From positions 1 to 64,000 of the IMG/VR virus record IMGVR_UViG_3300042566_001780: 64,000 nt of DNA. One strand, 5' to 3'. A program made the translations under genes and the position numbers. Shown here piece by piece: positions 29 to 57,896 of the stretch. The notes below the pieces were generated by a model, which had not been told where the DNA came from, made no database searches, and saw only the letters and a program-made list of their open reading frames with translations. How positions within the stretch are numbered: position 1 is the first letter of the stretch; the number at the start of each line of letters is the position of its first letter.

Positions 29-105
29 TGGCATATAGCTCAGTTGGTAGTAGCAAGTGACTGTTAATCACTAGGTCCCTGGTTCGAGCCCAGGTATGCC
101 AGCCA
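29..105 (+). tRNA. trnN: tRNA-Asn(GTT)
   Basis: Acceptor TGGCATA/TATGCCA, D arm, anticodon arm AGTGA-CTGTTAA-TCACT, T loop TTCGAGC, G73 and encoded CCA. Confidence 0.95.
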
Positions 106-133
106 GTTTTAAACTTTTTGAAGAACTTCAAAA

Positions 134-337
134 ATGCTCAAAGATCGAAAAGCCCTTCTTGAAGATGAAATCAGGAAGAATCACAAGAAAGCCGCAGACC
201 TCTATCTCATGATGGTCTCTGGTACAAAGAAAACTGTTGAAGATCACTCAGAAGAGTATGAACTTTTGAAAGCTAAACTGACTGATCTTCGATTTGAATT
301 GAATTTAGTTGATTCCCTGATTTCTCAAGGCAATTAA
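134..337 (+). CDS. Small hypothetical coiled-coil protein (67 aa)
   Basis: ATG ORF with upstream AGAAG between tRNA genes; helical, charged composition. Confidence 0.65.
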   Translation: MLKDRKALLEDEIRKNHKKAADLYLMMVSGTKKTVEDHSEEYELLKAKLTDLRFELNLVDSLISQGN

Positions 338-345
338 TAATTTTG

Positions 346-511
346 TGCCCGTGTAGTTGAGTGGTAAAAACAGACACTGAGTTGCAGCAATTCTAGACAT
401 GATGCAACAATGCTTTCATAACACGAAGGTAGTAGATCGGCCGGTTTGCTATCTGATTATGAGAGTGTAAAGGTGGAAGGTCGTGGGTTCGAGTCCCTCC
501 ATGGGTAGCCA
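346..511 (+). ncRNA. tRNA-like RNA with ~85-nt structured insertion replacing the anticodon loop
   Basis: Acceptor (T)GCCCGTG/CATGGGT(A), D arm GTT-GAGTGGTAAA-AAC, stem ACACT(374-378)/AGTGT(464-468), T arm GTGGG-TTCGAGT-CCCTC, terminal GCCA; internal 12-bp hairpin 427-454. Confidence 0.75.
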
Positions 512-652
512 TATCAAAGTGTTCATTGTTAGGTTCCTCTGATTATCCTAAGGTGTCATCAGAGCAGGGTCCTTGGAATTACAAGGAAGAAGAATGAGGA
601 AACTCATTTGGAAGGCAAGTGCAAATCCCCCTGGTGAATTCTTTGATATGGT
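508..652 (+). ncRNA. Putative multi-branched structured RNA between tRNA genes
   Basis: 12-bp closing stem GCCATATCAAAG/CTTTGATATGGT; hairpins 537-564, 570-587 and 593-608 (GAAA tetraloop); no ORF. Confidence 0.55.
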
Positions 653-660
653 TTAAAGAT

Positions 661-737
661 GCCGTTGTGATGGAATTGGTATACGTGTCTGATTCAAAAT
701 CAGAATTCTGTGGGTTCGAGTCCCACCAGCGGCACCA
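661..737 (+). tRNA. trnL: tRNA-Leu(CAA), short variable arm
   Basis: GCCGTTG/CAGCGGC acceptor, TCTGA-TTCAAAA-TCAGA anticodon arm, 5-nt variable loop, A73, CCA. Confidence 0.9.
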
Positions 738-742
738 TCAGT

Positions 743-836
743 TTTCCAAAACACATAGTCTCGCCGTTAGGCTAGCATGACGGATTATTGTTAGAGACCT
801 TGCATGATTAGACTTGAGTGCAATGTGTTTTGGGAA
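743..836 (+). ncRNA. Putative pseudoknotted small RNA
   Basis: 14-bp closing stem 743-756/823-836; GTCTC/GAGAC; hairpin 764-783 whose loop CTAGCA can pair with TGTTAG 789-794. Confidence 0.55.
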
Positions 837-847
837 TTATAGTTTTT

Positions 848-924
848 CTGCCCTTGGCGCAACTGAATAGCGCAACTGCCTTCTAAGCAGTAGGTTGTGG
901 GTTTGACTCCCGCAGGGCAGGCCA
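848..924 (+). tRNA. trnR: tRNA-Arg(TCT)
   Basis: CTGCCCT/AGGGCAG acceptor, ACTGC-CTTCTAA-GCAGT anticodon arm, CCA; T loop TTTGACT and D loop lacking GG are non-canonical. Confidence 0.88.
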
Positions 925-946
925 TTCATTTTTAATCAACCAAAAA

Positions 947-957
947 TGTGATACAAT
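947..957 (+). promoter_or_regulatory. Early-type extended -10 promoter TGTGATACAAT
   Basis: Matches the recurring motif; upstream of the 1008/1214 gene pair. Confidence 0.5.
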
Positions 958-969
958 CAATCTATGGAA

Positions 970-977
970 CTAAATAG
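970..977 (+). promoter_or_regulatory. Putative late promoter CTAAATAG
   Basis: Same 8-mer found upstream of many structural genes in this window. Confidence 0.55.
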
Positions 978-1007
978 CTTATTGTTATACCACTAACTTT
1001 TTGAAGG

Positions 1008-1217
1008 TTGAATATGAATTTGATGAATGAAGTTCTTCAAGTCTCTTTGATTGAAGAAGACATCCAAGAAAACGGCGCTGGCTTCAAAGCTGAGGACCTC
1101 CGCCAAGTTATTCAGTGTGTTACTACACTGAATGAGCAACAGCTCTCTGAGCCTCTTGAAGCTGATGACTTCCTTGCTCAAATGCGCAAAGAAGGTCTTT
1201 TGCCTGGAGGTGAATGA
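1008..1217 (+). CDS. Putative acidic antitoxin (69 aa)
   Basis: Small acidic ORF coupled by an ATGA overlap to the downstream RelE/YafQ-like gene. Confidence 0.55.
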   Translation: MNMNLMNEVLQVSLIEEDIQENGAGFKAEDLRQVIQCVTTLNEQQLSEPLEADDFLAQMRKEGLLPGGE

Positions 1218-1630
1218 AAATGGCAAAAGCAAGTAACGCCCCAGCAAAGAAGGTCGTTTTTCAAAGAACAGGTTTGTTCAATGACACCTTCGCAAACTAT
1301 GCAAATAATGCTACTGTGACAGCTAAGTTTGAGGATTTCATTGCCTTCAAGCGTCAGAATCCTCTTTTGCCTTATGGTAGCAAAGACGAACATTTCAAGG
1401 GCAATGGTCCCTTAGGTCAATCTAAAGTTATTCACGTTCACTTAACGCATAACGTCAATTTAATCTATAGTCGTGCCGGCAGTAATCCTATGACTATCAC
1501 TTTAATTTGGATTGGCGTTCATGATGAAATGGGCACAGGGCAACCACCAAATGCAAAGTTGCAAAAGAATGCTGCAGCAAAATTCTTAGCTGCTAAACCA
1601 GAAGGAAAAGTTTTTGAAAATGGAAAATGA
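1214..1630 (+). CDS. RelE/YafQ-like ribosome-dependent mRNA interferase
   Basis: Pattern PYGSKDEHFKG...IHVHL..NVNLIY...ITLIWIGVHDEM resembles YafQ KDHxLxG...CHI..D.LLIY...TGSH. Confidence 0.7.
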   Translation: MKMAKASNAPAKKVVFQRTGLFNDTFANYANNATVTAKFEDFIAFKRQNPLLPYGSKDEHFKGNGPLGQSKVIHVHLTHNVNLIYSRAGSNPMTITLIWIGVHDEMGTGQPPNAKLQKNAAAKFLAAKPEGKVFENGK

Positions 1631-1711
1631 TGTAAGATGGTCTCTTACGACTGCCTGCTAAGCAGTTCGTCCAGTCAAATGGATTCGGTTCGATCCCGAC
1701 GTTTTCCGCCA
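1622..1711 (+). tRNA. trnS: tRNA-Ser(GCT) with 8/4 acceptor/T-stem architecture
   Basis: 8-bp acceptor GGAAAATG/CGTTTTCC, 4-bp T stem TCGG/CCGA, 5-bp D stem GTAAG/CTTAC, anticodon GCT, long variable arm TCCA/TGGA, G73, CCA. Confidence 0.85.
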
Positions 1712-1728
1712 TAATAAGGAACTAGAAA

Positions 1729-2403
1729 ATGAAAAAAGTTATTGAGATTAGGCCTGCTGAAGGCGGTGAAGATTCTAAGTTGTTTGTCAGTGATCTGGCA
1801 AACGCATATGTGAAGTTGTCCATGAAAAAGGGCTGAAAGCACCAGCTGTCAGATTGTGATTCTTACACAACAATCACAATTACTGGTCACGATTTGACAG
1901 CTCTATCTCAAGAAGCCGGTGGTCACAGAATTCAGCGAGTACCGCCAACTGAAAGAAAATGTCGGGTACACACATCAACTGTTACTGTAGCAGTTCTAGA
2001 TGGTGATTCTTTAGTTGGCACAATTGCACTAGATCAAAAAGATCTCAAGCTTGAATGGTATTCTGGTACTGGATGTGGTGGCCAAAATCGTAATAAGGTG
2101 ATGGCTTCTTGTAGATTGACGCACGTTCCAACAGGAATTGTGAAAACGTCCCAAACAAGAAGCCGCGAAACTTCTTATGCTCAAGCATTGACTGCATTAA
2201 CTCAAGCAGTCAATGAAGGTTTGACAAAATCAAAGTTGAGCCAATTCAATCAAATTCGTAAGAATCAGGTTGGAAGTGGCGAACGCGGTGATAAAATAAG
2301 AACTTATCGATTTCAAGATGATTCAGTAAAAGATCATCGCACAAACAAAAGTGCTTCTGTTGCAAAAGTAATGAATGGTCATTTTGACCTTCTTTGGAAA
2401 TAA
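1729..2403 (+). CDS. RF1-type peptide chain release factor homolog lacking domain 1, with in-frame TGA at 1834-1836
   Basis: ATG 1729 with AAGGA RBS gives MKKVIEIRPAEGGEDSKLF..., in frame with GHRIQRVPPTE (PxT), GTGCGGQNRNK (GGQ) and GERGDKIRTYRF; the TGA occupies the conserved Trp position of RF1 (xxGW). Confidence 0.88.
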
Positions 2404-2405
2404 TA

Positions 2406-2678
2406 ATGGCTAAGTTGAATGCACGACAAATTGGTGAATTGGAAGCTCGGCAATTCTTGGGTGATGATGTTTGGAAGGCTTACAAAACTGATTATGATCA
2501 GTTGATGGCTTTTCGCAAAACACTTAAGGGAAAACCGACTGAAGAACAGAAAATCATTTTGGCTGCTAATAATGCGTTCATTGATTTTTATGGGAGCATT
2601 TTGTTCCATTCTGCAAGGTTGGCTTCTAGTGGAAAATGTGACTGCACGCGTTGCGGAAAGATTCGCAACGCTAAATAA
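2406..2678 (+). CDS. Hypothetical protein with C-terminal CxCxxC cluster
   Basis: ATG directly after the RF stop; ends ...KCDCTRCGK. Confidence 0.6.
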   Translation: MAKLNARQIGELEARQFLGDDVWKAYKTDYDQLMAFRKTLKGKPTEEQKIILAANNAFIDFYGSILFHSARLASSGKCDCTRCGKIRNAK

Positions 2679-2714
2679 TCTTAGTGCTATCACTATTCTC
2701 AAAGAAAGATTCTT

Positions 2715-3089
2715 ATGAAACTCGAAAACCTCGTTATTGACAAAAAGCCTGATACAAAAGCAGCTACTACTTCTGCTCCAGAGGAAACTCCGGGTGGTGC
2801 CACTGTGATGATCTTGAATGATCCTATCACTCCAGCAGAAGTTGTAGTTGAAGCTATCATGCATGGTACTGGATTGTCGAAACAGGCTGCTATGAAGCGC
2901 ATGATGCGTGCTCATCGTAATGGTTGGGTGCCTATTGCTTCTTATGCTACTAAAGACATTGCTGAAACGATTGCAAACAAAATCGAGCAACACGCTCGAA
3001 ACAATCCGAACTATGACCACTATCGTCCATTTGTTCGTCATAACGGACCTTGGCCGCTAGCTGTTGAAGTAATGGATGCTGAACAATGA
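2715..3089 (+). CDS. clpS: ClpS-like Clp protease adaptor
   Basis: VMILNDPITPAEVVVEAI...MMRAHRNG...YATKDIAETI matches the ClpS core. Confidence 0.85.
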   Translation: MKLENLVIDKKPDTKAATTSAPEETPGGATVMILNDPITPAEVVVEAIMHGTGLSKQAAMKRMMRAHRNGWVPIASYATKDIAETIANKIEQHARNNPNYDHYRPFVRHNGPWPLAVEVMDAEQ

Positions 3090-3095
3090 AATGAT

Positions 3096-3172
3096 GCACC
3101 GATGACGGAGCGGTCTAACGTCTACGCCTGCAAAGCGTGTGTTCCCAGGTTCAAATCCTGGTCGGTGCTCCA
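3096..3172 (+). tRNA. trnC: tRNA-Cys(GCA)
   Basis: GCACCGA/TCGGTGC acceptor, anticodon GCA, U73 discriminator, CCA. Confidence 0.95.
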
Positions 3173-3658: not shown

Positions 3659-5788
3659 ATGAACAAGCTCTCCATTGCATTTGCAAACAATCTCGCCATC
3701 ATTCCGACCCATGATAATGGCGATACCAAAAATACCGCTCTTGCAATGAGTGTTCAAGCTGAACTAATGAATGTCGGCTTCATGTTGAGCAAAGAAGCTT
3801 TCTCTTATCTTGAGACACGCACTGAGTCTTTCATTGCATCCTTCCATAACGGTATCATTCCTCTTGCAAAATCCGCAAAGGGCGTCACTAGCAAGAAGTA
3901 TTCTCCACTTTGGAAGAACTTCCCAATTGATGTTATGGCTGCATCTGATGCAGAGCTCTACATCACTGCGCTTATCCATTACTGGACTAATGGTACTTGG
4001 TCACCAGACGCGGAGCTGAAGGCTCGCGGTTTTGCTTTTGAAAAGAAAAACTTTATTGAGCTAAAGCTTGCTCCTGAAAATTGGGAGCAAAGTCTTGTCA
4101 ATGATTTGGCGGCTTTCACCAAACCGCTTGATCCCACCAATCTAAATAACCTGGTGTGGCTTGCGCAGAACTGTCAAGTCACCATTCCGGAAGTTTCTGT
4201 CAAAGAAACTATGGCAGCTTTGGCTGTAGCTGGAATTCCAGTGAAGGTGAAATCTCCTGTTGATGTGCTGCGGATTGCAGTCGGCATGTCTGGTGGCGAT
4301 ATGGCTCTCCCTTCTATGCCAAAAATCCCGCAAATGAAGGATAAGAGCTTGATGCGTGGCAGCTACGCATTTAATGCAAAAGTACAAGAAGCTAATGCGT
4401 TGCGTGAAACTTTCAAATTCAAGAAGTTCACTCGAAGCGAACGCCGGTACATCCTTGGATTGCTTGAGTCGCTGAAATTTGTTGATGAAGCAGAAATGCA
4501 GCGTCATCTTGGCCGTTGGGTTCGTCTTGGCGAAGTTCTCCATCCAGGCGAAATGAAGAGCAAGTTTCCAAAAGCAGCAGCTGCATTCTCCAAGATTCGC
4601 AATCAAGAAGAAGTGAAGGTTCGTACCTTTGCTGGTCGTGTTGATCTGGCGTTCAAGCAATCTCCTGATGTTGGTATGCAAGTTCTTCAAGAACGTCCTG
4701 GTGAATTTGCACGTCGTCTTGATGCACTGGTTCGTAATGAAAAGCATGATGCACAGCAGGTGATTGATCGATTTGCAGAAGTTGCAGGCAAAGTGTCGAC
4801 TAAAGTGCTGTTCGAGATGTTTGATCATTTTGAAGGTCGCTTGAAGGACAAGCCGCGTATGGTCATGATCAAGGGTAAAGGTTCCAAGGTTAAGAATCTG
4901 GAAACTCTCCCGAAACTGCCAGATCATATTGTGGAAAATATCCAGAAGATGATCAAGCAACAATTGGCTAATCGCGCTGCAAAGTTGCCAGCAATGGGTA
5001 ATGTGTTTGTTGATGATCAACTGCTGAATATGCCGGTGCCATATTCTATGCAATCCTCTGCAGAGGGTACTTCTACTTTGGTTCGCGGTACTCGCATGCC
5101 AATTGTTGAAGGTGCCAATACACTGCGTGGGTTTGTTCACTGGTATGATGAGAATGGCGATGACGACATTGATTTGTCGGCTACGTTCCTGGGCGCAAAG
5201 TTTGAAATTCTTGGTGAATGTGCATTCTATGATCTGCGGTCCACGAATTTGAAGGCGTATCACTCTGGTGATGTTCGCCATCGTATTGGGCATAATGCAG
5301 AGTACATTGACTTTGATTTGAATTCTGCTAAGGAACATGGTGTCAAGTATGTGGTGTTCTCTGCATACAATTTCAATGGTAATGCCATTAAGTCTGTACC
5401 TGAATGCACCTTTGGCGTGATGGAGCGTTCTAAGCCAAAAAGCAATGAGATCTTTGACCCAGCTACTGCCCCACAAGCTATCAAAGTTCAGGCAAATAGC
5501 AATTCGGTGTTTCCTGTCATGATTGATGTGGAAGCACATGAATGGATTTGGTTGGATCTTGAATCTGAAGGTCGAGGCTTTGCTTCTTTCCATAGTAATT
5601 CTTCTACTCTTGACAAAATCAAGGCATTCACACAACAAGCAAAGTTCAGTGTCTATGATCTGATTTCTCTGCATGTTGGCAGTCGCTCTGGTACCATTGT
5701 GAACAAGATGGAAGATGCTGATCTCATCTATTCGTATGACGACATTGTTCGAAACTATTCGAAACTGACTGAGTTCTTGAACATCTAA
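3659..5788 (+). CDS. ROT/TROVE-like helical protein fused to C-terminal TerD domain (709 aa)
   Basis: Helical N-region with RPGEFARRLDALVR; C-terminal TerD-like segment (W...DDIDLSATF...HSGDVR...AEYIDFDL...YVVFSAYNF); architecture recalled for the Prok-RING_4-associated family, but no RING finger here. Confidence 0.65.
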   Translation: MNKLSIAFANNLAIIPTHDNGDTKNTALAMSVQAELMNVGFMLSKEAFSYLETRTESFIASFHNGIIPLAKSAKGVTSKKYSPLWKNFPIDVMAASDAELYITALIHYWTNGTWSPDAELKARGFAFEKKNFIELKLAPENWEQSLVNDLAAFTKPLDPTNLNNLVWLAQNCQVTIPEVSVKETMAALAVAGIPVKVKSPVDVLRIAVGMSGGDMALPSMPKIPQMKDKSLMRGSYAFNAKVQEANALRETFKFKKFTRSERRYILGLLESLKFVDEAEMQRHLGRWVRLGEVLHPGEMKSKFPKAAAAFSKIRNQEEVKVRTFAGRVDLAFKQSPDVGMQVLQERPGEFARRLDALVRNEKHDAQQVIDRFAEVAGKVSTKVLFEMFDHFEGRLKDKPRMVMIKGKGSKVKNLETLPKLPDHIVENIQKMIKQQLANRAAKLPAMGNVFVDDQLLNMPVPYSMQSSAEGTSTLVRGTRMPIVEGANTLRGFVHWYDENGDDDIDLSATFLGAKFEILGECAFYDLRSTNLKAYHSGDVRHRIGHNAEYIDFDLNSAKEHGVKYVVFSAYNFNGNAIKSVPECTFGVMERSKPKSNEIFDPATAPQAIKVQANSNSVFPVMIDVEAHEWIWLDLESEGRGFASFHSNSSTLDKIKAFTQQAKFSVYDLISLHVGSRSGTIVNKMEDADLIYSYDDIVRNYSKLTEFLNI

Positions 5789-53744: not shown

Positions 53745-54467
53745 TCAGTAAGTGTCAATTTTAGGAATGGCAATCAACTCATACGAGTTATACGTAACTC
53801 GAAGTTGCCCAGTTTGAGAAATAGAGAATGTGACTGGATCGCATTCTTTACTTGAAGCATCAAGAAGTTTTGCAATAACCCCGCCTGCTCCGTCGAAGCT
53901 TGTCAACATTGGAGTTGCTTCATCAATAAACTCGGCAGGATTTTCAAGTTTGAATTCAAACGTATCGTTGGTACTGTCTTTGGCTTCAAACCGGATAATT
54001 TGGTTGCGGTCAATGTGCATCATGATTTTTTCAGACGACAGCACGTTGACGCCACGAACAATCTGCGATACTTCTGCTTTAGACATTACACCCACTGCAA
54101 CTACAGGATCTGTAATTTCTGTAGGCGCTTTGATCATCTTTGGATCTGTACATCTAAACTCAACTCGACCAGATGCCGTCTTGATGTGCATAATTTTAGC
54201 TTTACCTTCAGATGTTACATCTAAAGTCACGTCAATGCTATCACCAAAAAGAGACAAACGTTTGTCAAGTTCGCTAAGACGATTTAAGCCAATCTTGATA
54301 TCGTGATTGTCGGTAAATGAAAAATCTGAGAAGATGCAGCCATTCATCTTCTCAGACACACCACTTACTTTTCCATCTCGAATAACAAATGCATCAACAC
54401 CAACTAAGCGAGCTGCAGAAATAGCATTTTTCAATGCCGTGATATCTTGAGGAGTAAATTTGATCAT
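53745..54467 (-). CDS. gp45: Sliding clamp (gp45-like)
   Basis: 240 aa with a two-domain alpha/beta clamp pattern, directly downstream of the polymerase. Confidence 0.65.
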   Translation of the reverse strand: MIKFTPQDITALKNAISAARLVGVDAFVIRDGKVSGVSEKMNGCIFSDFSFTDNHDIKIGLNRLSELDKRLSLFGDSIDVTLDVTSEGKAKIMHIKTASGRVEFRCTDPKMIKAPTEITDPVVAVGVMSKAEVSQIVRGVNVLSSEKIMMHIDRNQIIRFEAKDSTNDTFEFKLENPAEFIDEATPMLTSFDGAGGVIAKLLDASSKECDPVTFSISQTGQLRVTYNSYELIAIPKIDTY

Positions 54468-54503: not shown

Positions 54504-56113
54504 TCAAAATTTGAACACGGAATTGATATAGCTTCCTTGCAGCGTTGGCTTTTCAATTCCCATTGCATCAAAGATACCTTCAATTTTTGAGTCAATCAAT
54601 TTTTCTTCTGTTAGCGCCATATCAATCCTGAAGTTTTCGTTGAACCATTGAGGAATATGCATTAAGTCAGAAGGGAATGCGATTGATTTAAGACCGAACT
54701 CATTGGGCATTAAGTAAAAAACGACACCTTTATCACCTGATTTGATCATAGGTGCATCAGGTTGGAATTGAGTAATTAGTTCATTGTAGTTGATTGCTGC
54801 TCTTACATGTCCTGGGAGATTAATCTTCTTATTGTTCTTTTTCTCATTCAACGTCCAATCAGCATACAACTTGTCGAGGTTATTAATCTGCTTAGCGCCG
54901 CCAAGAGCAAGAACATCTTCCGACTTATGAATCAATTTACCACGAGATTCATTGACTAGTTTTTCAATATCTGAATACGGCTTTTTATCAAGAATCAAAT
55001 CCATCAGTTTCTTCAAGAAATCTTGAATGACTTTAGGAGTGTCGGCTTTCTTGATTTCTGAACCCATCGATTTCAGTTTAGGTTTTTCACGAAGATCAAG
55101 ACCTTCTAAGTTGACTACTTTAAGCGTGTACTTTTTCTTTGCAGTCAAGAATAAACCAGTTTCTGCAACTACTTCACGTGCTACCTTAATAAGATCTTCA
55201 CGACCTTCAGTACAGTTGAAACTCTTTTTCATGAATGCTGAGAACATGTCATTCACTGTAGAAGCAACATCATCAGCAATAGTTACAGCATCTTCATAGT
55301 TGTCGACAGGAATGCTGAAATACGCAGAGTCGGTATCAGAATAGATGCACTGAGTGTTTTTCGAATAGTAGAATGCGCCATAGCATGGATGCGCAGTTCC
55401 CTTGTACATTAGCAGTTCGCCAGCCCGCGTTGGGAATTTTTCCAACTCGTTCCATTTGCAATGCTTACGGTATAAAGCTAGATCATCACTTGAAATGACT
55501 GTTTTATATGAAGATCGAGTTTCACCTTCATCAGTAACTGTAGTTACCAAACGAGATGGTGCATAGCGTTTTTCAATAACACACTCTTGACCAGACACTA
55601 ATTCGCCAATAGTCTCATTCATGAAATGCGTAATTTGACGCCCACACCCGGTTACTGATGCGCCAACCTCTCGCCGCCCAAATCTGAAGGCCACGTTAAG
55701 AAGAGAACCGTACGTGCTGTTCCTTAGTGTTACGGTGATATCGTTTCCATATCACCTCTCATTGTTGCCAATGAGAGCAGACTATATCATCATCCACATG
55801 GGATGCCGGGCGCTTCGAGATCACTTGACCCCTACGAGCATATGCTCTAGTCGTTGCACCTTCCGTGTTAGCGGCTTGGCTCAGGATTGTCCACTTGGGA
55901 GTTTCCCTGAATTCACCCGGTTTTCGACAACCATTGCTGATTGAAGGCTCTAAATCAAAGCTGAATTTTTTTCGTAAGCTGTAAAAGATCGTAGTGTTCT
56001 GCTTGTTGAGCAGCATATTGGATCTTTTCATATTCTTCTCGTGTATACAGTTTGCTTCCATCAAGAATCAAACTGCCATTTTTTATTCCTGTTCTAATTT
56101 CATCAATGTTCAT
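54504..56113 (-). CDS. gp43: Family B DNA polymerase C-terminal subunit; exon 1 56113-55958, exon 2 55721-54504
   Basis: Splicing restores motif B LQLTKKIQL|NSTYG; motif C YSDTDS; KKKY; ATG 56113 overlaps the end of the N-terminal gene. Confidence 0.85.
55722..55957 (-). mobile_element. Group I self-splicing intron (236 nt, no homing endonuclease ORF)
   Basis: 5' exon ends in U (GCUU paired with GAGC in P1); intron ends in G; core GGTGAATTCAGGGAAACTC, AATCCTGAGCCAAG, AAGGTGCAACGACT, GATATAGTCT. Confidence 0.92.
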
Positions 56114-57896
56114 TTTTCAGTTGTTCCAAAATGTCCTCAGTCAATTTTATGCCAGTTACTTCTTTCAATGAAATCATTTCCTTGGTCCATTTCTTCTTTT
56201 CTGCTTGCAATCGTTTACGCTCAGAAAACCAGAATGTCAAAGTGTCTGCTACCATCCCAATCTTATTTTGATCAAACACTGTTCCATAAGCAGAGATTGC
56301 CCAGTTCATATCCTTCATAATCTGTTTCCACTCTTTGCCGGTCTTCTGCTCTGGAGCAAATTCATCAAACTCGAGTGTCCATTGATTTGCATCTTCAGCT
56401 ACAATTCCCAACCAAGCATATTCGCCTTCTGCAAACTGTCCGATAACAGTTTCACGCGACATGTTCAAGGCGCGAATCACTGATGGATACAGCGAGTTAA
56501 TGTCAACAGATGCCACCCAATCATGCAAACCTGCAAGCGGTGTAAGAACCAGGGCACCCTCAACCTTTTCGTTTGCATGCTCAATAATTTCTTTGTTGAA
56601 ACAAACTAGATTATGAACATGATGGGCACGATTCATAATACCAGTTTCAACATATCGAACAGTACCCATGATAGCTACAAATGGCACTGTATTTTCGTGA
56701 GCCATTTGATTGACAAGTTGAATGAATTTGTACTTATCATCAAGCATAACTAGAAGCTGAACGTCATGCAAGTTATAAGCAACAAATTTTAAGAATGAAG
56801 CATCTTTGAATTCTCTATCAATCTCTTCATATTCCTTTTTCAAAGACACATCATTTACAGATTCACGTTTTAACCATGCTCGAATATTAGCTAGGCGAAG
56901 AACTTCATCTTCAATTTCTAGAATTTGCTCAAAGGTTGTACGAGAAATATCTGGCTCAAATGTACCTTTGTAAAGCTGCTCAAGCGTGCCTTCATAATCA
57001 AGCTTTGGAATTCCTAGTTCTTCAAGACCAATGTTTCCAAGAGAGTATGAAGTGCGACCTTCGAAGGTGAACTTCTTGAAGGCATCCAGGTAATCCAGGT
57101 GTGTTCTACCATAAAGCTGATAGACTATAGCAGGCGAGCCAAACCGCATCACTGTGGACTCACGTGGTGCTTGCGCGCCTTTAAAGGACATCCTTGCTAC
57201 AATCTTATCGCCATAAACTCGCTGAATTCGCTTGACAATATATGGAATATCGAAGAACTCAGAGTTCCAACCGCTGATAATGTCAAGATCCTCAATCTCT
57301 TCCAGAAAACCTGCTAGCAACTCTTTTTCATTGGCGCATAGATAGATTTCTGGAAAAATCTTGACATCATGTGCAAGTAGAACCTTCTTTAATCGATCTT
57401 CAAATCCGACTTTACCATTCCAACCAGGAGGAGGAACTGCAAAAGTCACATACTTCTTTGAATTTGAGTGGTAGATAGTGACTGCGTTGATGGGAGCATA
57501 TGGATTCTCTGGAGATGAGAAACCCAAACCTGCTGCCGAAGAATAGTCTGTTTCAATATCGATAAAGCCATAATTGATGATAGGCGTAGGACGATCGTAA
57601 TATTCATCCATCAGCACTCGAGCTGCAGGCTGAACATCAGATTCAAACTTTACTCTGTATGACCTACACAAGTTGTTGAATTCTTCTTCATCGTAACAAT
57701 CAACGCGCTTTACAGTTTCTCCAGTGATTGTTTTTCTATCACCATTTTCATCAGGGACGTAAAAATATCTAGGGGCATCATACTCAACCAGAGTACGAGG
57801 CCCACCTTCAATTGGTCGTTCCCAAACTAACACTTTATCTGACTTACGGTCATGATAAGCAGAGATGAAATTTGTTAGTTTCTTAGGTTGTGTCAT
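56103..57896 (-). CDS. gp43: Family B DNA polymerase N-terminal subunit (3'-5' exonuclease plus motif A)
   Basis: FIDIETD, GWNSEFFDIPY, YNLHDV, VEGALV, SVDINSLYPS; ends after the first finger helix. Confidence 0.92.
   Translation of the reverse strand: MTQPKKLTNFISAYHDRKSDKVLVWERPIEGGPRTLVEYDAPRYFYVPDENGDRKTITGETVKRVDCYDEEEFNNLCRSYRVKFESDVQPAARVLMDEYYDRPTPIINYGFIDIETDYSSAAGLGFSSPENPYAPINAVTIYHSNSKKYVTFAVPPPGWNGKVGFEDRLKKVLLAHDVKIFPEIYLCANEKELLAGFLEEIEDLDIISGWNSEFFDIPYIVKRIQRVYGDKIVARMSFKGAQAPRESTVMRFGSPAIVYQLYGRTHLDYLDAFKKFTFEGRTSYSLGNIGLEELGIPKLDYEGTLEQLYKGTFEPDISRTTFEQILEIEDEVLRLANIRAWLKRESVNDVSLKKEYEEIDREFKDASFLKFVAYNLHDVQLLVMLDDKYKFIQLVNQMAHENTVPFVAIMGTVRYVETGIMNRAHHVHNLVCFNKEIIEHANEKVEGALVLTPLAGLHDWVASVDINSLYPSVIRALNMSRETVIGQFAEGEYAWLGIVAEDANQWTLEFDEFAPEQKTGKEWKQIMKDMNWAISAYGTVFDQNKIGMVADTLTFWFSERKRLQAEKKKWTKEMISLKEVTGIKLTEDILEQLKNEH

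What the first reader, a model, noticed from the sequence alone, without database searches (positions are those of the whole stretch)
55722..55957. Endonuclease-free group I intron inside polymerase motif B
The intron interrupts KKIQL|NSTYG, the dNTP-binding motif. Its first three bases form an in-frame TGA, so unspliced RNA gives only a 52-aa peptide. Replication therefore needs both splicing and two-subunit assembly. Core elements resemble the IC3/IB-type introns of bacterial tRNA and phage genes; the subgroup is uncertain. With no internal homing ORF, it is either a stranded intron or mobilised by a free-standing endonuclease elsewhere.
Basis: partly seen in the sequence, partly recalled or inferred. 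Interest (0 to 1): 0.6.

Follow-up and report, generated by a model that had tools for sequence, protein, structure and literature searches.

The report
Group I intron in phage polymerase
A 236-base group I intron (subgroup IA2) with no endonuclease gene of its own sits in the nucleotide-binding motif of the only DNA polymerase gene of an uncultured freshwater jumbo phage; it is real and well supported, but it is a familiar kind of selfish element in phage polymerase genes.

Summary
On the minus strand, 55957..55722 is a 236-nt group I intron (Rfam RF00028, 85.2 bits). It splits KKIQL|NSTYG, motif B of a family B DNA polymerase, and begins with an in-frame TGA.

- **Splice junction:** exon 1 and exon 2 abut without gap or overlap on four intron-less homologues.
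- **RNA fold:** homologous introns occupy the same site in six other metagenomic phage lineages. Across the seven, a hand-drawn P1-P9.1 fold is 98% paired, and 32 of 63 pairs change on both sides.
- **Splice-site signals:** the U.G pair at the 5' splice site and the terminal G are invariant. All seven intron-bearing alleles end exon 1 with Leu CTT; the four intron-less ones use CTA or TTG.
- **Subgroup:** P7.1 and P7.2 joined by GUA make it IA2, not IC3/IB.
- **Split gene:** the two-cistron polymerase is real. It appears in an independent DNA assembly, in a 97% relative that lacks the A-run, and in about 27 related protein clusters.
- **Mobility:** no endonuclease gene lies in the intron or within 4 kb. 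An 80%-identical relative carries a zinc-finger/Vsr-like nuclease gene between the two cistrons, as Aeromonas phage 25 does.

Splicing was not seen in RNA contigs. This is a new member of a known kind.

The parts
56103..57896 (-). First polymerase cistron ('43A-like', 597 aa). It holds the N-terminal and 3'-5' exonuclease domains, palm motif A (DINSLYPS) and the first fingers helix (ERKRLQAEKKKW). Its TGA stop at 56105..56103 overlaps the next cistron.
   Evidence: Pfam DNA_pol_B_exo1 5.9e-15 and DNA_pol_B 2.1e-10. About 27 related protein clusters of 527-597 aa end at the same place.
55958..56113 (-). Exon 1 of the second cistron ('43B-like'): ATG at 56113 and 52 codons ending ...EHYDLLQLTKKIQL. 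The last base, U at 55958, forms the U.G pair of P1.
   Evidence: Aligns to residues 1-52 of the intron-less 43B of L005 (73% identity) and ends exactly where exon 2 takes over. The Leu codon is CTT in all 7 intron-bearing alleles and CTA or TTG in 4 intron-less ones.
55722..55957 (-). Group I intron, subgroup IA2, 236 nt, no ORF. The first three bases (55957..55955) are an in-frame TGA; the terminal G is 55722.
   Evidence: RF00028 at 85.2 bits. Fold tested on 7 homologues: 98% paired, 32 of 63 pairs with changes on both sides, against about 40% paired when partners are slid. MFE fold z = -2.5 and recovers P2, P3, P7.1, P7.2, P8, P9 and P9.1.
55947..55961 (-). P1: exon GCUU (55961..55958) pairs with the internal guide GAGC (55950..55947). 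The U.G wobble is at the 5' splice site.
   Evidence: All four pairs are invariant in the 7 sequences; coordinates checked.
55806..55920 (-). P3 (55920..55914 with 55812..55806). It encloses P4 (55910..55905 / 55886..55881), P5 (55900..55898 / 55892..55890), P6 (55880..55879 / 55859..55858) and P6a (55874..55872 / 55865..55863).
   Evidence: Changes on both sides in P3 (2 pairs), P4 (2) and P5 (2). P6a was seen by eye only, in WIN and L004.
55780..55852 (-). P7 pseudoknot: GACUA (55852..55848) with UAGUC (55784..55780), the guanosine-binding helix.
   Evidence: All 5 pairs are invariant in the 7 sequences, so there is no covariation for or against.
55817..55847 (-). P7.1 (55847..55844 / 55839..55836), GUA linker (55835..55833) and P7.2 (55832..55827 / 55822..55817): the peripheral pair that defines subgroup IA2.
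   Evidence: 4 of 4 P7.1 pairs and 4 of 6 P7.2 pairs change on both sides, and the GUA is invariant. The criterion is quoted from PMC3428280.
55735..55805 (-). P8 (55805..55801 / 55795..55791), P9 with a GCAA loop (55777..55769 / 55764..55756) and P9.1 (55755..55749 / 55741..55735).
   Evidence: Changes on both sides in P8 (3 pairs), P9 (3) and P9.1 (7 of 7).
54504..55721 (-). Exon 2 (405 codons plus stop): NSTYG (second half of motif B), motif C (IYSDTDS) and the thumb.
   Evidence: Aligns to L005 43B residues 53-453, RsoM2USA 449-807 and RAS14 544-870. Against L004: 156 synonymous and 54 non-synonymous codon changes. The first possible in-frame start, GTG at 55694, lies 9 codons downstream of NSTYG.

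Best explanation
[quoted passage not shown] It lies in the second cistron of a naturally split family B DNA polymerase gene of an uncultured jumbo phage. The two cistrons are probably transcribed together. The first (597 aa) ends 11 nt after the ATG of the second, which suggests coupled translation. In the transcript the intron folds into P1-P9.1. A free guanosine bound at P7 attacks after the U of the U.G pair (55958). The freed exon 1 then attacks after the terminal G (55722), joining ...KKIQL to NSTYG... and restoring motif B, the dNTP-binding helix of the fingers. Unspliced RNA stops at the TGA after 52 codons. The spliced 457-aa product then has to assemble with the 597-aa product, helix against helix at the fingers and strand against strand in the palm, to give the only recognisable replicative polymerase of the genome. 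The intron cannot move by itself. In this genome it is inherited vertically or rescued by recombination. In at least one relative a free-standing zinc-finger/Vsr-like nuclease gene sits next to it and may drive homing in trans. Shown here: sequence, fold, covariation, exact exon junction, the real split and selection on exon 2. Inferred: catalysis, subunit assembly, coupled translation and mode of spread.
For: Rfam 85.2 bits over the full model. Seven homologous introns sit at the identical site; 98% of cells are paired, 32 of 63 pairs change on both sides, 0 of 500 shuffles reach this, and slid controls give 37-43% paired. The U.G pair and the terminal G are invariant. Exons abut exactly on L005, L155, RsoM2USA and RAS14. 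CTT is the last exon-1 codon only in intron-bearing alleles. Exon 2 is under purifying selection, and NSTYG lies upstream of any start codon, so it can be translated only after splicing. Motifs A, B and C are intact, and there is no second PolB or PolA in the 292-kb record. The split is real: an independent DNA contig spans it with no gap, L006 keeps the arrangement with AAACATG instead of AAAAATG, and about 27 clusters end at the same point. Complex model of the natural intron-less pair: score 0.77 against a best control of 0.00. That mark was reached by 51 of 78 solved complexes and 2 of 108 mismatched pairs. Runs agree in at least 95% of contacts and the partner's pLDDT is 71. Precedent: the gp43A and gp43B of Aeromonas phages co-purify and are active, as reviewed in PMC2988022.
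Against: No spliced joint was seen. The two RNA runs gave only short contigs that contain intron sequence. One crosses the 5' splice site unspliced (X19, 55837-55990), which could be precursor RNA or DNA carry-over. P7 and P1 never vary, so covariation says nothing about them. P10 is weak, 2 bp in the window by eye. The complex pass may reflect memory of solved single-chain PolB folds. There is no clear Shine-Dalgarno sequence before the 43B ATG.
Confidence: 0.85

Rival explanations
1. The intron is still mobile, driven in trans by a free-standing homing endonuclease encoded elsewhere in this same genome, for example the Ros/MucR-finger plus MTES_1575 nuclease ORF at G000 84418-85572.
For: G000 encodes three endonuclease-like ORFs: 82445-84013, 84418-85572 and 185768-186634. 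The 384-aa one has the same domain make-up as the 280-aa ORF that sits beside the intron in L004. L012 and L153 introns are 95% identical while their host proteins are 81% identical, which hints at recent exchange.
Against: Those ORFs lie 28 kb or more from the intron, beside the terminase gene. The 384-aa ORF is only about 28% identical to the L004 ORF. Free-standing homing endonucleases usually cut near their own gene (PMC2988022). Five of six intron-bearing lineages examined show no adjacent endonuclease gene.
Confidence: 0.1
2. The intron is a decayed relic that no longer splices, and the polymerase gene is a pseudogene or works without exon 2.
For: No spliced RNA was observed, and unspliced-type contigs are present in RNA libraries.
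Against: All helices are intact and maintained by compensatory changes in 7 lineages. Exon 2 shows 156 synonymous against 54 non-synonymous codon changes relative to L004. Catalytic motif C lies in exon 2, and no other replicative polymerase is found in the record.
Confidence: 0.04
3. The two-cistron state is an assembly error in an A5 run or a programmed +1 frameshift, so there is one polypeptide and no subunit assembly.
For: The frames switch at CTGAAAAATG; one A fewer would fuse the frames. There is no strong ribosome-binding site before the ATG.
Against: An independent DNA study gives the same letters with no gap (record 10). L006 has AAACATG, so no homopolymer, with the same stop-start overlap. 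L005 has a TAG stop, 6 nt and then ATG. About 27 diverged clusters end at the same point, and 43 separate 43B-type proteins start about 48 residues before motif B.
Confidence: 0.02
4. Splicing needs a host or phage protein, or is regulated, so that polymerase supply is gated by splicing rather than being neutral.
For: P10 is weak and P1 is short, with 4 exon pairs. The in-frame stop at the first intron codon is kept as UGA or UAA in all 7 sequences.
Against: Related phage IA2 introns self-splice in vitro (PMC3428280; PMC3984707). An immediate stop is the simplest consequence of the conserved U(A/G)A start of P1.
Confidence: 0.1

Closest known systems
Aeromonas salmonicida phage 25 gene 43: intron 25.g43B, split 43A/43B and a free-standing GIY-YIG endonuclease (Petrov, Ratnayaka & Karam, J Mol Biol 2010; reviewed in PMC2988022 and PMC2993671; record AY303350.2)
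   Same: Family B polymerase split into two cistrons after the first fingers helix. [quoted passage not shown] A free-standing endonuclease gene lies between the cistrons, here seen in relative L004.
   Different: The host is a jumbo phage only distantly related to T4-like phages. The intron sits 6-7 codons further upstream (KKIQL|NS here, against KILINSLYGAL| in phage 25). The window has no intercistronic spacer and no endonuclease gene. The L004 endonuclease is a Ros/MucR-finger plus PvuRts1I/Vsr-like nuclease on the opposite strand, not GIY-YIG.
Subgroup IA2 introns of phage DNA polymerase genes (SPO1, Bastille, T7-like phiI/W31, cyanophage Pf-WMP3; PMC3428280, PMC3984707)
   Same: IA2 architecture with P7.1 and P7.2 joined by GUA, U.G at the 5' splice site, and insertion in a conserved catalytic motif of an essential replication gene.
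   Different: Those introns lie in family A polymerases, and most carry an HNH endonuclease ORF. This one lies in family B and has none.
Ralstonia phage BOESR1 DNA polymerase I intron (OR367448.1)
   Same: Nearest sequence relative among isolates: 72% identity over 99% of the intron, ORF-less, about 243 nt. It also follows a Leu CTT codon inside motif B, splitting KTFIYGFL|YGAG.
   Different: The host gene is a family A polymerase of a 42-kb T7-like phage. The exon context is unrelated.
Collaborative (trans) homing: cyanophage psbA intron with F-CphI, and T4 mobE with the nrdB intron (PMC3984707, PMC2988022)
   Same: [quoted passage not shown] Relatives here show three states: split only (L005), split plus intron (window, L006) and split plus intron plus endonuclease (L004).
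   Different: Cleavage of the intron-less site by the L004 enzyme is untested, and the window itself lacks the enzyme.
Group I introns, inteins and endonuclease genes that fragment essential genes of jumbo phages (Jug phages, PMC12880540)
   Same: A jumbo phage lineage whose polymerase and terminase genes are repeatedly interrupted by introns, inteins and stand-alone endonucleases.
   Different: Different phage clade and habitat (freshwater, soil and wastewater metagenomes). There is only one group I intron in this genome, against about 18 per Jug genome.

Membership tests
Group I catalytic intron (Rfam RF00028) | Covariance-model score above the curated gathering threshold over the whole model | tested here: met
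   85.2 bits against 50, model positions 1-253 of 253.
Group I catalytic intron (Rfam RF00028) | Conserved core helices P3-P8 with the P3/P7 pseudoknot, supported by compensatory change | tested here: met
   63 pairs, 98% paired, 32 with changes on both sides, slid controls about 40%. P7 and P1 are invariant and so uninformative.
Group I catalytic intron (Rfam RF00028) | U.G wobble at the 5' splice site in P1, and a terminal G at the 3' splice site | tested here: met
   U55958 pairs with G in the GAGC guide, and G55722 is the last base. Both are invariant in 7 sequences.
Group I catalytic intron (Rfam RF00028) | Guanosine-dependent self-splicing that yields ligated exons | not testable with these tools
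   RNA contigs showed no spliced joint and one unspliced 5' junction. This needs RT-PCR or an in vitro assay.
Subgroup IA2 | Extra helices P7.1 and P7.2 between P7 and P3', joined by G-U-A | tested here: met
   Both hairpins are present, with 8 of 10 pairs changing on both sides and an invariant GUA at 55835..55833. Criterion quoted in PMC3428280. Subgroup-specific covariance models were not available.
   P7.1/P7.2 are present and covarying. All blastn relatives are phage protein-gene introns of the Twort, SPbeta or polymerase type, none in a tRNA.
Mobile group I intron with its own homing endonuclease | Endonuclease ORF in a peripheral loop | tested here: not met
   236 nt. The longest sense open stretch is 65 codons out of frame, and the ORFs overlapping the intron have no Pfam match.
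Collaborative/trans homing pair | Free-standing endonuclease gene beside the intron-bearing gene | tested here: not met
   None within 4 kb in the window; gene order matches L005 one to one. The feature is met in relative L004: a 280-aa ORF, PvuRts1I-like_N 29.7 bits and ROS_MUCR 26.9 bits, both above their cut-offs, plus PHROG 'homing endonuclease' families.
Collaborative/trans homing pair | The endonuclease cuts the intron-less allele at or near the intron insertion site | not testable with these tools
   Needs a cleavage assay with the L004 ORF product on the L005-type site.
Split family B polymerase (43A/43B type) | Two separate cistrons, conserved among relatives and not an assembly error | tested here: met
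   independent contig, no gap; about 27 clusters end at the same place; L006 and L005 junctions; 43 separate 43B proteins.
Split family B polymerase (43A/43B type) | The two products assemble into one active enzyme | tested here: inconclusive
   Complex model score 0.77 against a best control of 0.00 (mark reached by 51 of 78 solved complexes and 2 of 108 mismatched pairs; at least 95% contact agreement; partner pLDDT 71). This is a model only and may come from memory of single-chain PolB structures. Activity was not tested.

The most novel reading that the evidence does not exclude
This jumbo-phage lineage may be a natural three-state series for collaborative homing: split gene only (L005), split gene plus ORF-less intron (the window), and split gene plus intron plus a free-standing endonuclease (L004). 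The endonuclease would be of an uncharacterised architecture, a Ros/MucR zinc finger fused to a PvuRts1I/Vsr-like nuclease, that recognises the motif B insertion site. The window's intron would then be the passive partner of a still-active trans-homing system shared among co-infecting phages.
Probability: 0.2. Interest if true: 0.5.

Novelty: new member of a known kind. Interest (0 to 1): 0.3.

Why it matters
For annotation, the polymerase of this phage and of many metagenomic relatives is called as three fragments (597, 52 and about 396 aa). It should instead be read as two subunits, one of them spliced. For biology, it adds a second, independent lineage in which a family B polymerase is split at the fingers tip and also carries an ORF-less intron in motif B, a pattern known so far from Aeromonas phage 25. 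It also supplies close relatives with and without the intron, and with a neighbouring endonuclease gene. That material could test how ORF-less introns spread. It does not change any concept.

Tried and rejected
- **Relatives in IMG/VR.** The search for related loci with the exon 2 product found none. A pattern scan of IMG/VR for the exon 1 end plus intron start gave 15 loci, none with a group I match, so these were chance hits.
- **Metagenome pattern scan.** Only one of the returned loci (L042) carried the intron core.
- **RNA evidence.** The two RNA runs gave no spliced joint. X19 record 3 crosses the 5' splice site unspliced. X20 record 20 is a relative with an L012-type intron start. This neither supports nor refutes splicing.
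- **Homopolymer error or frameshift at the 43A/43B junction.** Considered and rejected.
- **Hidden ORF in the intron.** Rejected.
- **IC3/IB assignment.** Rejected.
- **Intron tree against host tree as evidence of transfer.** Identities are broadly congruent, except L012/L153 (95% intron against 81% protein). I judged this too weak for a claim.
- **P10.** By eye, only 2 bp in the window and up to 4 bp in L004. Not counted as support.
- **Joined exon 1 + exon 2 product.** Not sent to any search, fold or complex tool. Exons were searched separately by reference, and the joined translation was read only in a local script. The complex test used the natural intron-less pair of relative L005.
- **Petrov et al. 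2010.** The primary paper is not held. It is cited through two reviews and the GenBank record.

Full report
**What is there.** The window is the first 64 kb of a 291,687-base IMG/VR virus record. The polymerase locus lies on the minus strand.
- A 597-aa ORF (57896..56103) carries the family B exonuclease domain and the start of the polymerase domain.
- Its stop overlaps by 11 nt the ATG (56113) of a 52-codon ORF that ends ...LTKKIQL.
- That ORF is followed at once by TGA (55957..55955).
- From 55721 the frame NSTYGSLLNVAFRF... runs 405 codons to the stop at 54504. It carries motif C (IYSDTDS).

Rfam's group I model matches 55967..55758 over its full length at 85.2 bits, E 3e-20. This is the only group I match in the genome.

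**Splice junction.** I kept the exons apart and searched them by reference.
- Exon 1 aligns to residues 1-52 of the intron-less second cistron of relative L005, and exon 2 to residues 53-453.
- The same abutment holds for L155 (..52 / 53..), Ralstonia phage RsoM2USA (..448 / 449..) and Stenotrophomonas phage RAS14 (..543 / 544..).
- No residue is gained or lost, and K-x3-N-S-x-Y-G (motif B) is restored.
- The joined product was not sent to any search, fold or complex tool. It was translated only in a local script, to read the frame.

**Relatives.** Isolated phages match only distantly: RsoM2USA at 42% amino-acid identity, then the RAS14/CM1 and XacN1 jumbo phages. Their polymerase genes are single and uninterrupted. 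The word search of the large protein collection found many metagenomic relatives.
- L006 and L007 (97% identity) repeat the window's arrangement.
- L005 (70%) has two cistrons and no intron.
- L004 (80%) has two cistrons, the intron, and a 280-aa ORF on the opposite strand between the cistrons.
- Five unsplit relatives (46-50%) have first ORFs ending ...EHYDLLQLTKKIQL.
- Rfam finds a group I intron at that very point in L012, L013 and L014. It finds none in L005, RsoM2USA or RAS14.
- L153 and L042 add two more introns at the site by sequence.
- Among 120 clusters similar to the second cistron, 43 have motif B intact about 48 residues from their start. At least seven others begin exactly with (M)NSxYG, the mark of an interruption at this site.

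**Structure.** I aligned seven introns from the same site and drew P1-P9.1 by hand on the window's sequence.
- Of 441 cells, 98% form standard pairs.
- 32 of 63 pairs change on both sides. No shuffle of 500 reaches any measure, and sliding the partners by 1-3 columns drops pairing to 37-43%.
- P2, P7.1 and P9.1 covary at every pair. P3, P4, P5, P7.2, P8 and P9 covary at several.
- P1, P6 and P7 never vary, so they are uninformative.
- The U.G pair at the 5' splice site and the terminal G are invariant.
- An energy-only fold of the window's intron recovers P2, P3, P7.1, P7.2, P8, P9 and P9.1 (z = -2.5).
- P7.1 and P7.2 lie between P7 and the 3' strand of P3 and are joined by an invariant GUA. 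That is the published criterion for subgroup IA2 (PMC3428280; PMC3984707).
- Blastn relatives are phage protein-gene introns: BOESR1 polymerase I, phiA009 and DSS3_VP1 terminase, SPbeta bnrdE, Twort, S-CBWM1 psbA and Aeromonas phage 25 gene 43B.
- The IC3/IB suggestion is therefore wrong.

**Signs that it splices.**
- All seven intron-bearing alleles end exon 1 with Leu CTT. This supplies the U of the U.G pair and the GCUU that pairs with the GAGC guide. The four intron-less alleles use CTA or TTG.
- NSTYG lies nine codons upstream of the first possible start in exon 2. It is kept at the protein level through synonymous changes.
- Exon 2 differs from L004 by 156 synonymous and 54 non-synonymous codon changes.
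- No other family B or family A polymerase is found in the record.

Together these argue that exon 2 is translated in frame with exon 1, which only splicing allows. Direct RNA evidence is lacking. Contigs of two metatranscriptome runs show intron-containing pieces and no spliced joint, and contigs cannot show absence.

**The split.** One A fewer in CTGAAAAATG would fuse the two frames, so I tested for an assembly error.
- A contig from an independent DNA study covers 55821-56656 with one mismatch and no gap.
- L006 has AAACATG at the same place, and L005 has TAG, six bases, then ATG.
- About 27 clusters at 45-97% identity end at the same point.

The break falls after the first fingers helix, the same structural spot as in Aeromonas phage 25. 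A complex model of the natural intron-less pair (L005) scored 0.77 against a best control of 0.00. That mark was reached by 51 of 78 solved complexes and 2 of 108 mismatched pairs. The runs agree in at least 95% of contacts and the partner's pLDDT is 71. The contacts join the last helix of the first product to the first 59 residues of the second, and join the palm strands. This may be memory of single-chain structures. It supports binding but does not show it.

**Mobility.** The intron holds no ORF. The ten genes around it match L005 one to one.

In L004 the inserted ORF has three parts: a Ros/MucR-type zinc finger, a PvuRts1I-like/MTES_1575/DUF559 nuclease domain, and matches to PHROG families named homing endonuclease. 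It also gives a faint match to the EDxHD enzyme I-Bth0305I. The ORF is flanked by two diverged copies of the first 25 codons of the second cistron, a footprint of insertion. It lies about 170 nt upstream of the intron site.

This mirrors phage 25, where a GIY-YIG gene sits between 43A and 43B and cuts intron-free 43B sites. The nuclease family and the orientation differ, and the intron lies 6-7 codons further upstream.

The window's own genome has three endonuclease-like ORFs far from the polymerase gene. One has the same domain make-up as the L004 ORF but only about 28% identity.

**Verdict.** This is a real, well-formed IA2 group I intron with no ORF, in motif B of a truly split polymerase. 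It is a new member of a known kind.

Noticed in passing
window 347-507 (+): A tRNA-like gene scores 35.2 bits in Rfam and is not called by ARAGORN. Its acceptor, D and T arms are intact, but about 105 nt stand in place of the 17-nt anticodon arm. It could be an interrupted or decayed tRNA in the phage tRNA cluster.
   Followed up: partly
window 29-3172 (+): Cluster of five phage tRNA genes: Asn-GTT, Leu-CAA, Arg-TCT, Ser-GCT and Cys-GCA.
   Followed up: no
G000 82445-87751 (outside the window): The terminase large subunit appears interrupted. ORF 85548-86642 has the tail of an intein splicing domain followed by Terminase_6N, both matches below Pfam's curated cut-offs. Upstream lie two endonuclease-like ORFs: 82445-84013 (DUF7487 above cut-off; Vsr and Mom just below) and 84418-85572 (ROS_MUCR above cut-off; MTES_1575 below).
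   Followed up: partly
G000 185768-186634 (-) (outside the window): A 288-aa ORF with a ROS_MUCR finger, NUMOD3 repeats and what looks by eye like a C-terminal HNH-type motif. It is probably a free-standing homing endonuclease beside structural genes.
   Followed up: no
L004 5777-5851 and 6711-6785: Two diverged copies (about 10 differences in 75 nt) of the first 25 codons of the second polymerase cistron flank the inserted 280-aa nuclease ORF. The upstream copy is a dead stub.
   Followed up: partly
L153 about 4290-4560: A second group-I-like element (GAGACUA ... AGAUAGUCC core) interrupts the same polymerase near motif C, between ...IIYG and TDSNYF. This relative therefore carries two introns in one gene. 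It was not scanned with Rfam.
   Followed up: no
L155 3220-3990, 5683-6426 and 7811-8500: In a 53%-identical relative, a 247-aa NUMOD3-bearing gene lies between the two polymerase cistrons. A Seg-like GIY-YIG gene lies just upstream and a 229-aa ORF just downstream. The split site seems to be a landing pad for endonuclease genes.
   Followed up: partly
L012 6059-6652 and L014 6306-7784: Exon 2 of these unsplit relatives carries Intein_splicing matches. Many database fragments start with intein C-terminal halves (...DEYVYDIIMED...). Inteins therefore also colonise this polymerase family.
   Followed up: no
L016 (Ralstonia phage BOESR1) 1501-1743: The nearest intron relative sits inside motif B of a family A polymerase (KTFIYGFL|YGAG) and also follows a CTT codon. 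The record annotates the two halves as separate polymerase genes.
   Followed up: partly
window 53745-54467 (-): A 240-aa ORF just downstream of the polymerase gene is conserved in position in all relatives and gives only a faint PCNA_N match (E 0.04). It may be a divergent sliding clamp.
   Followed up: no
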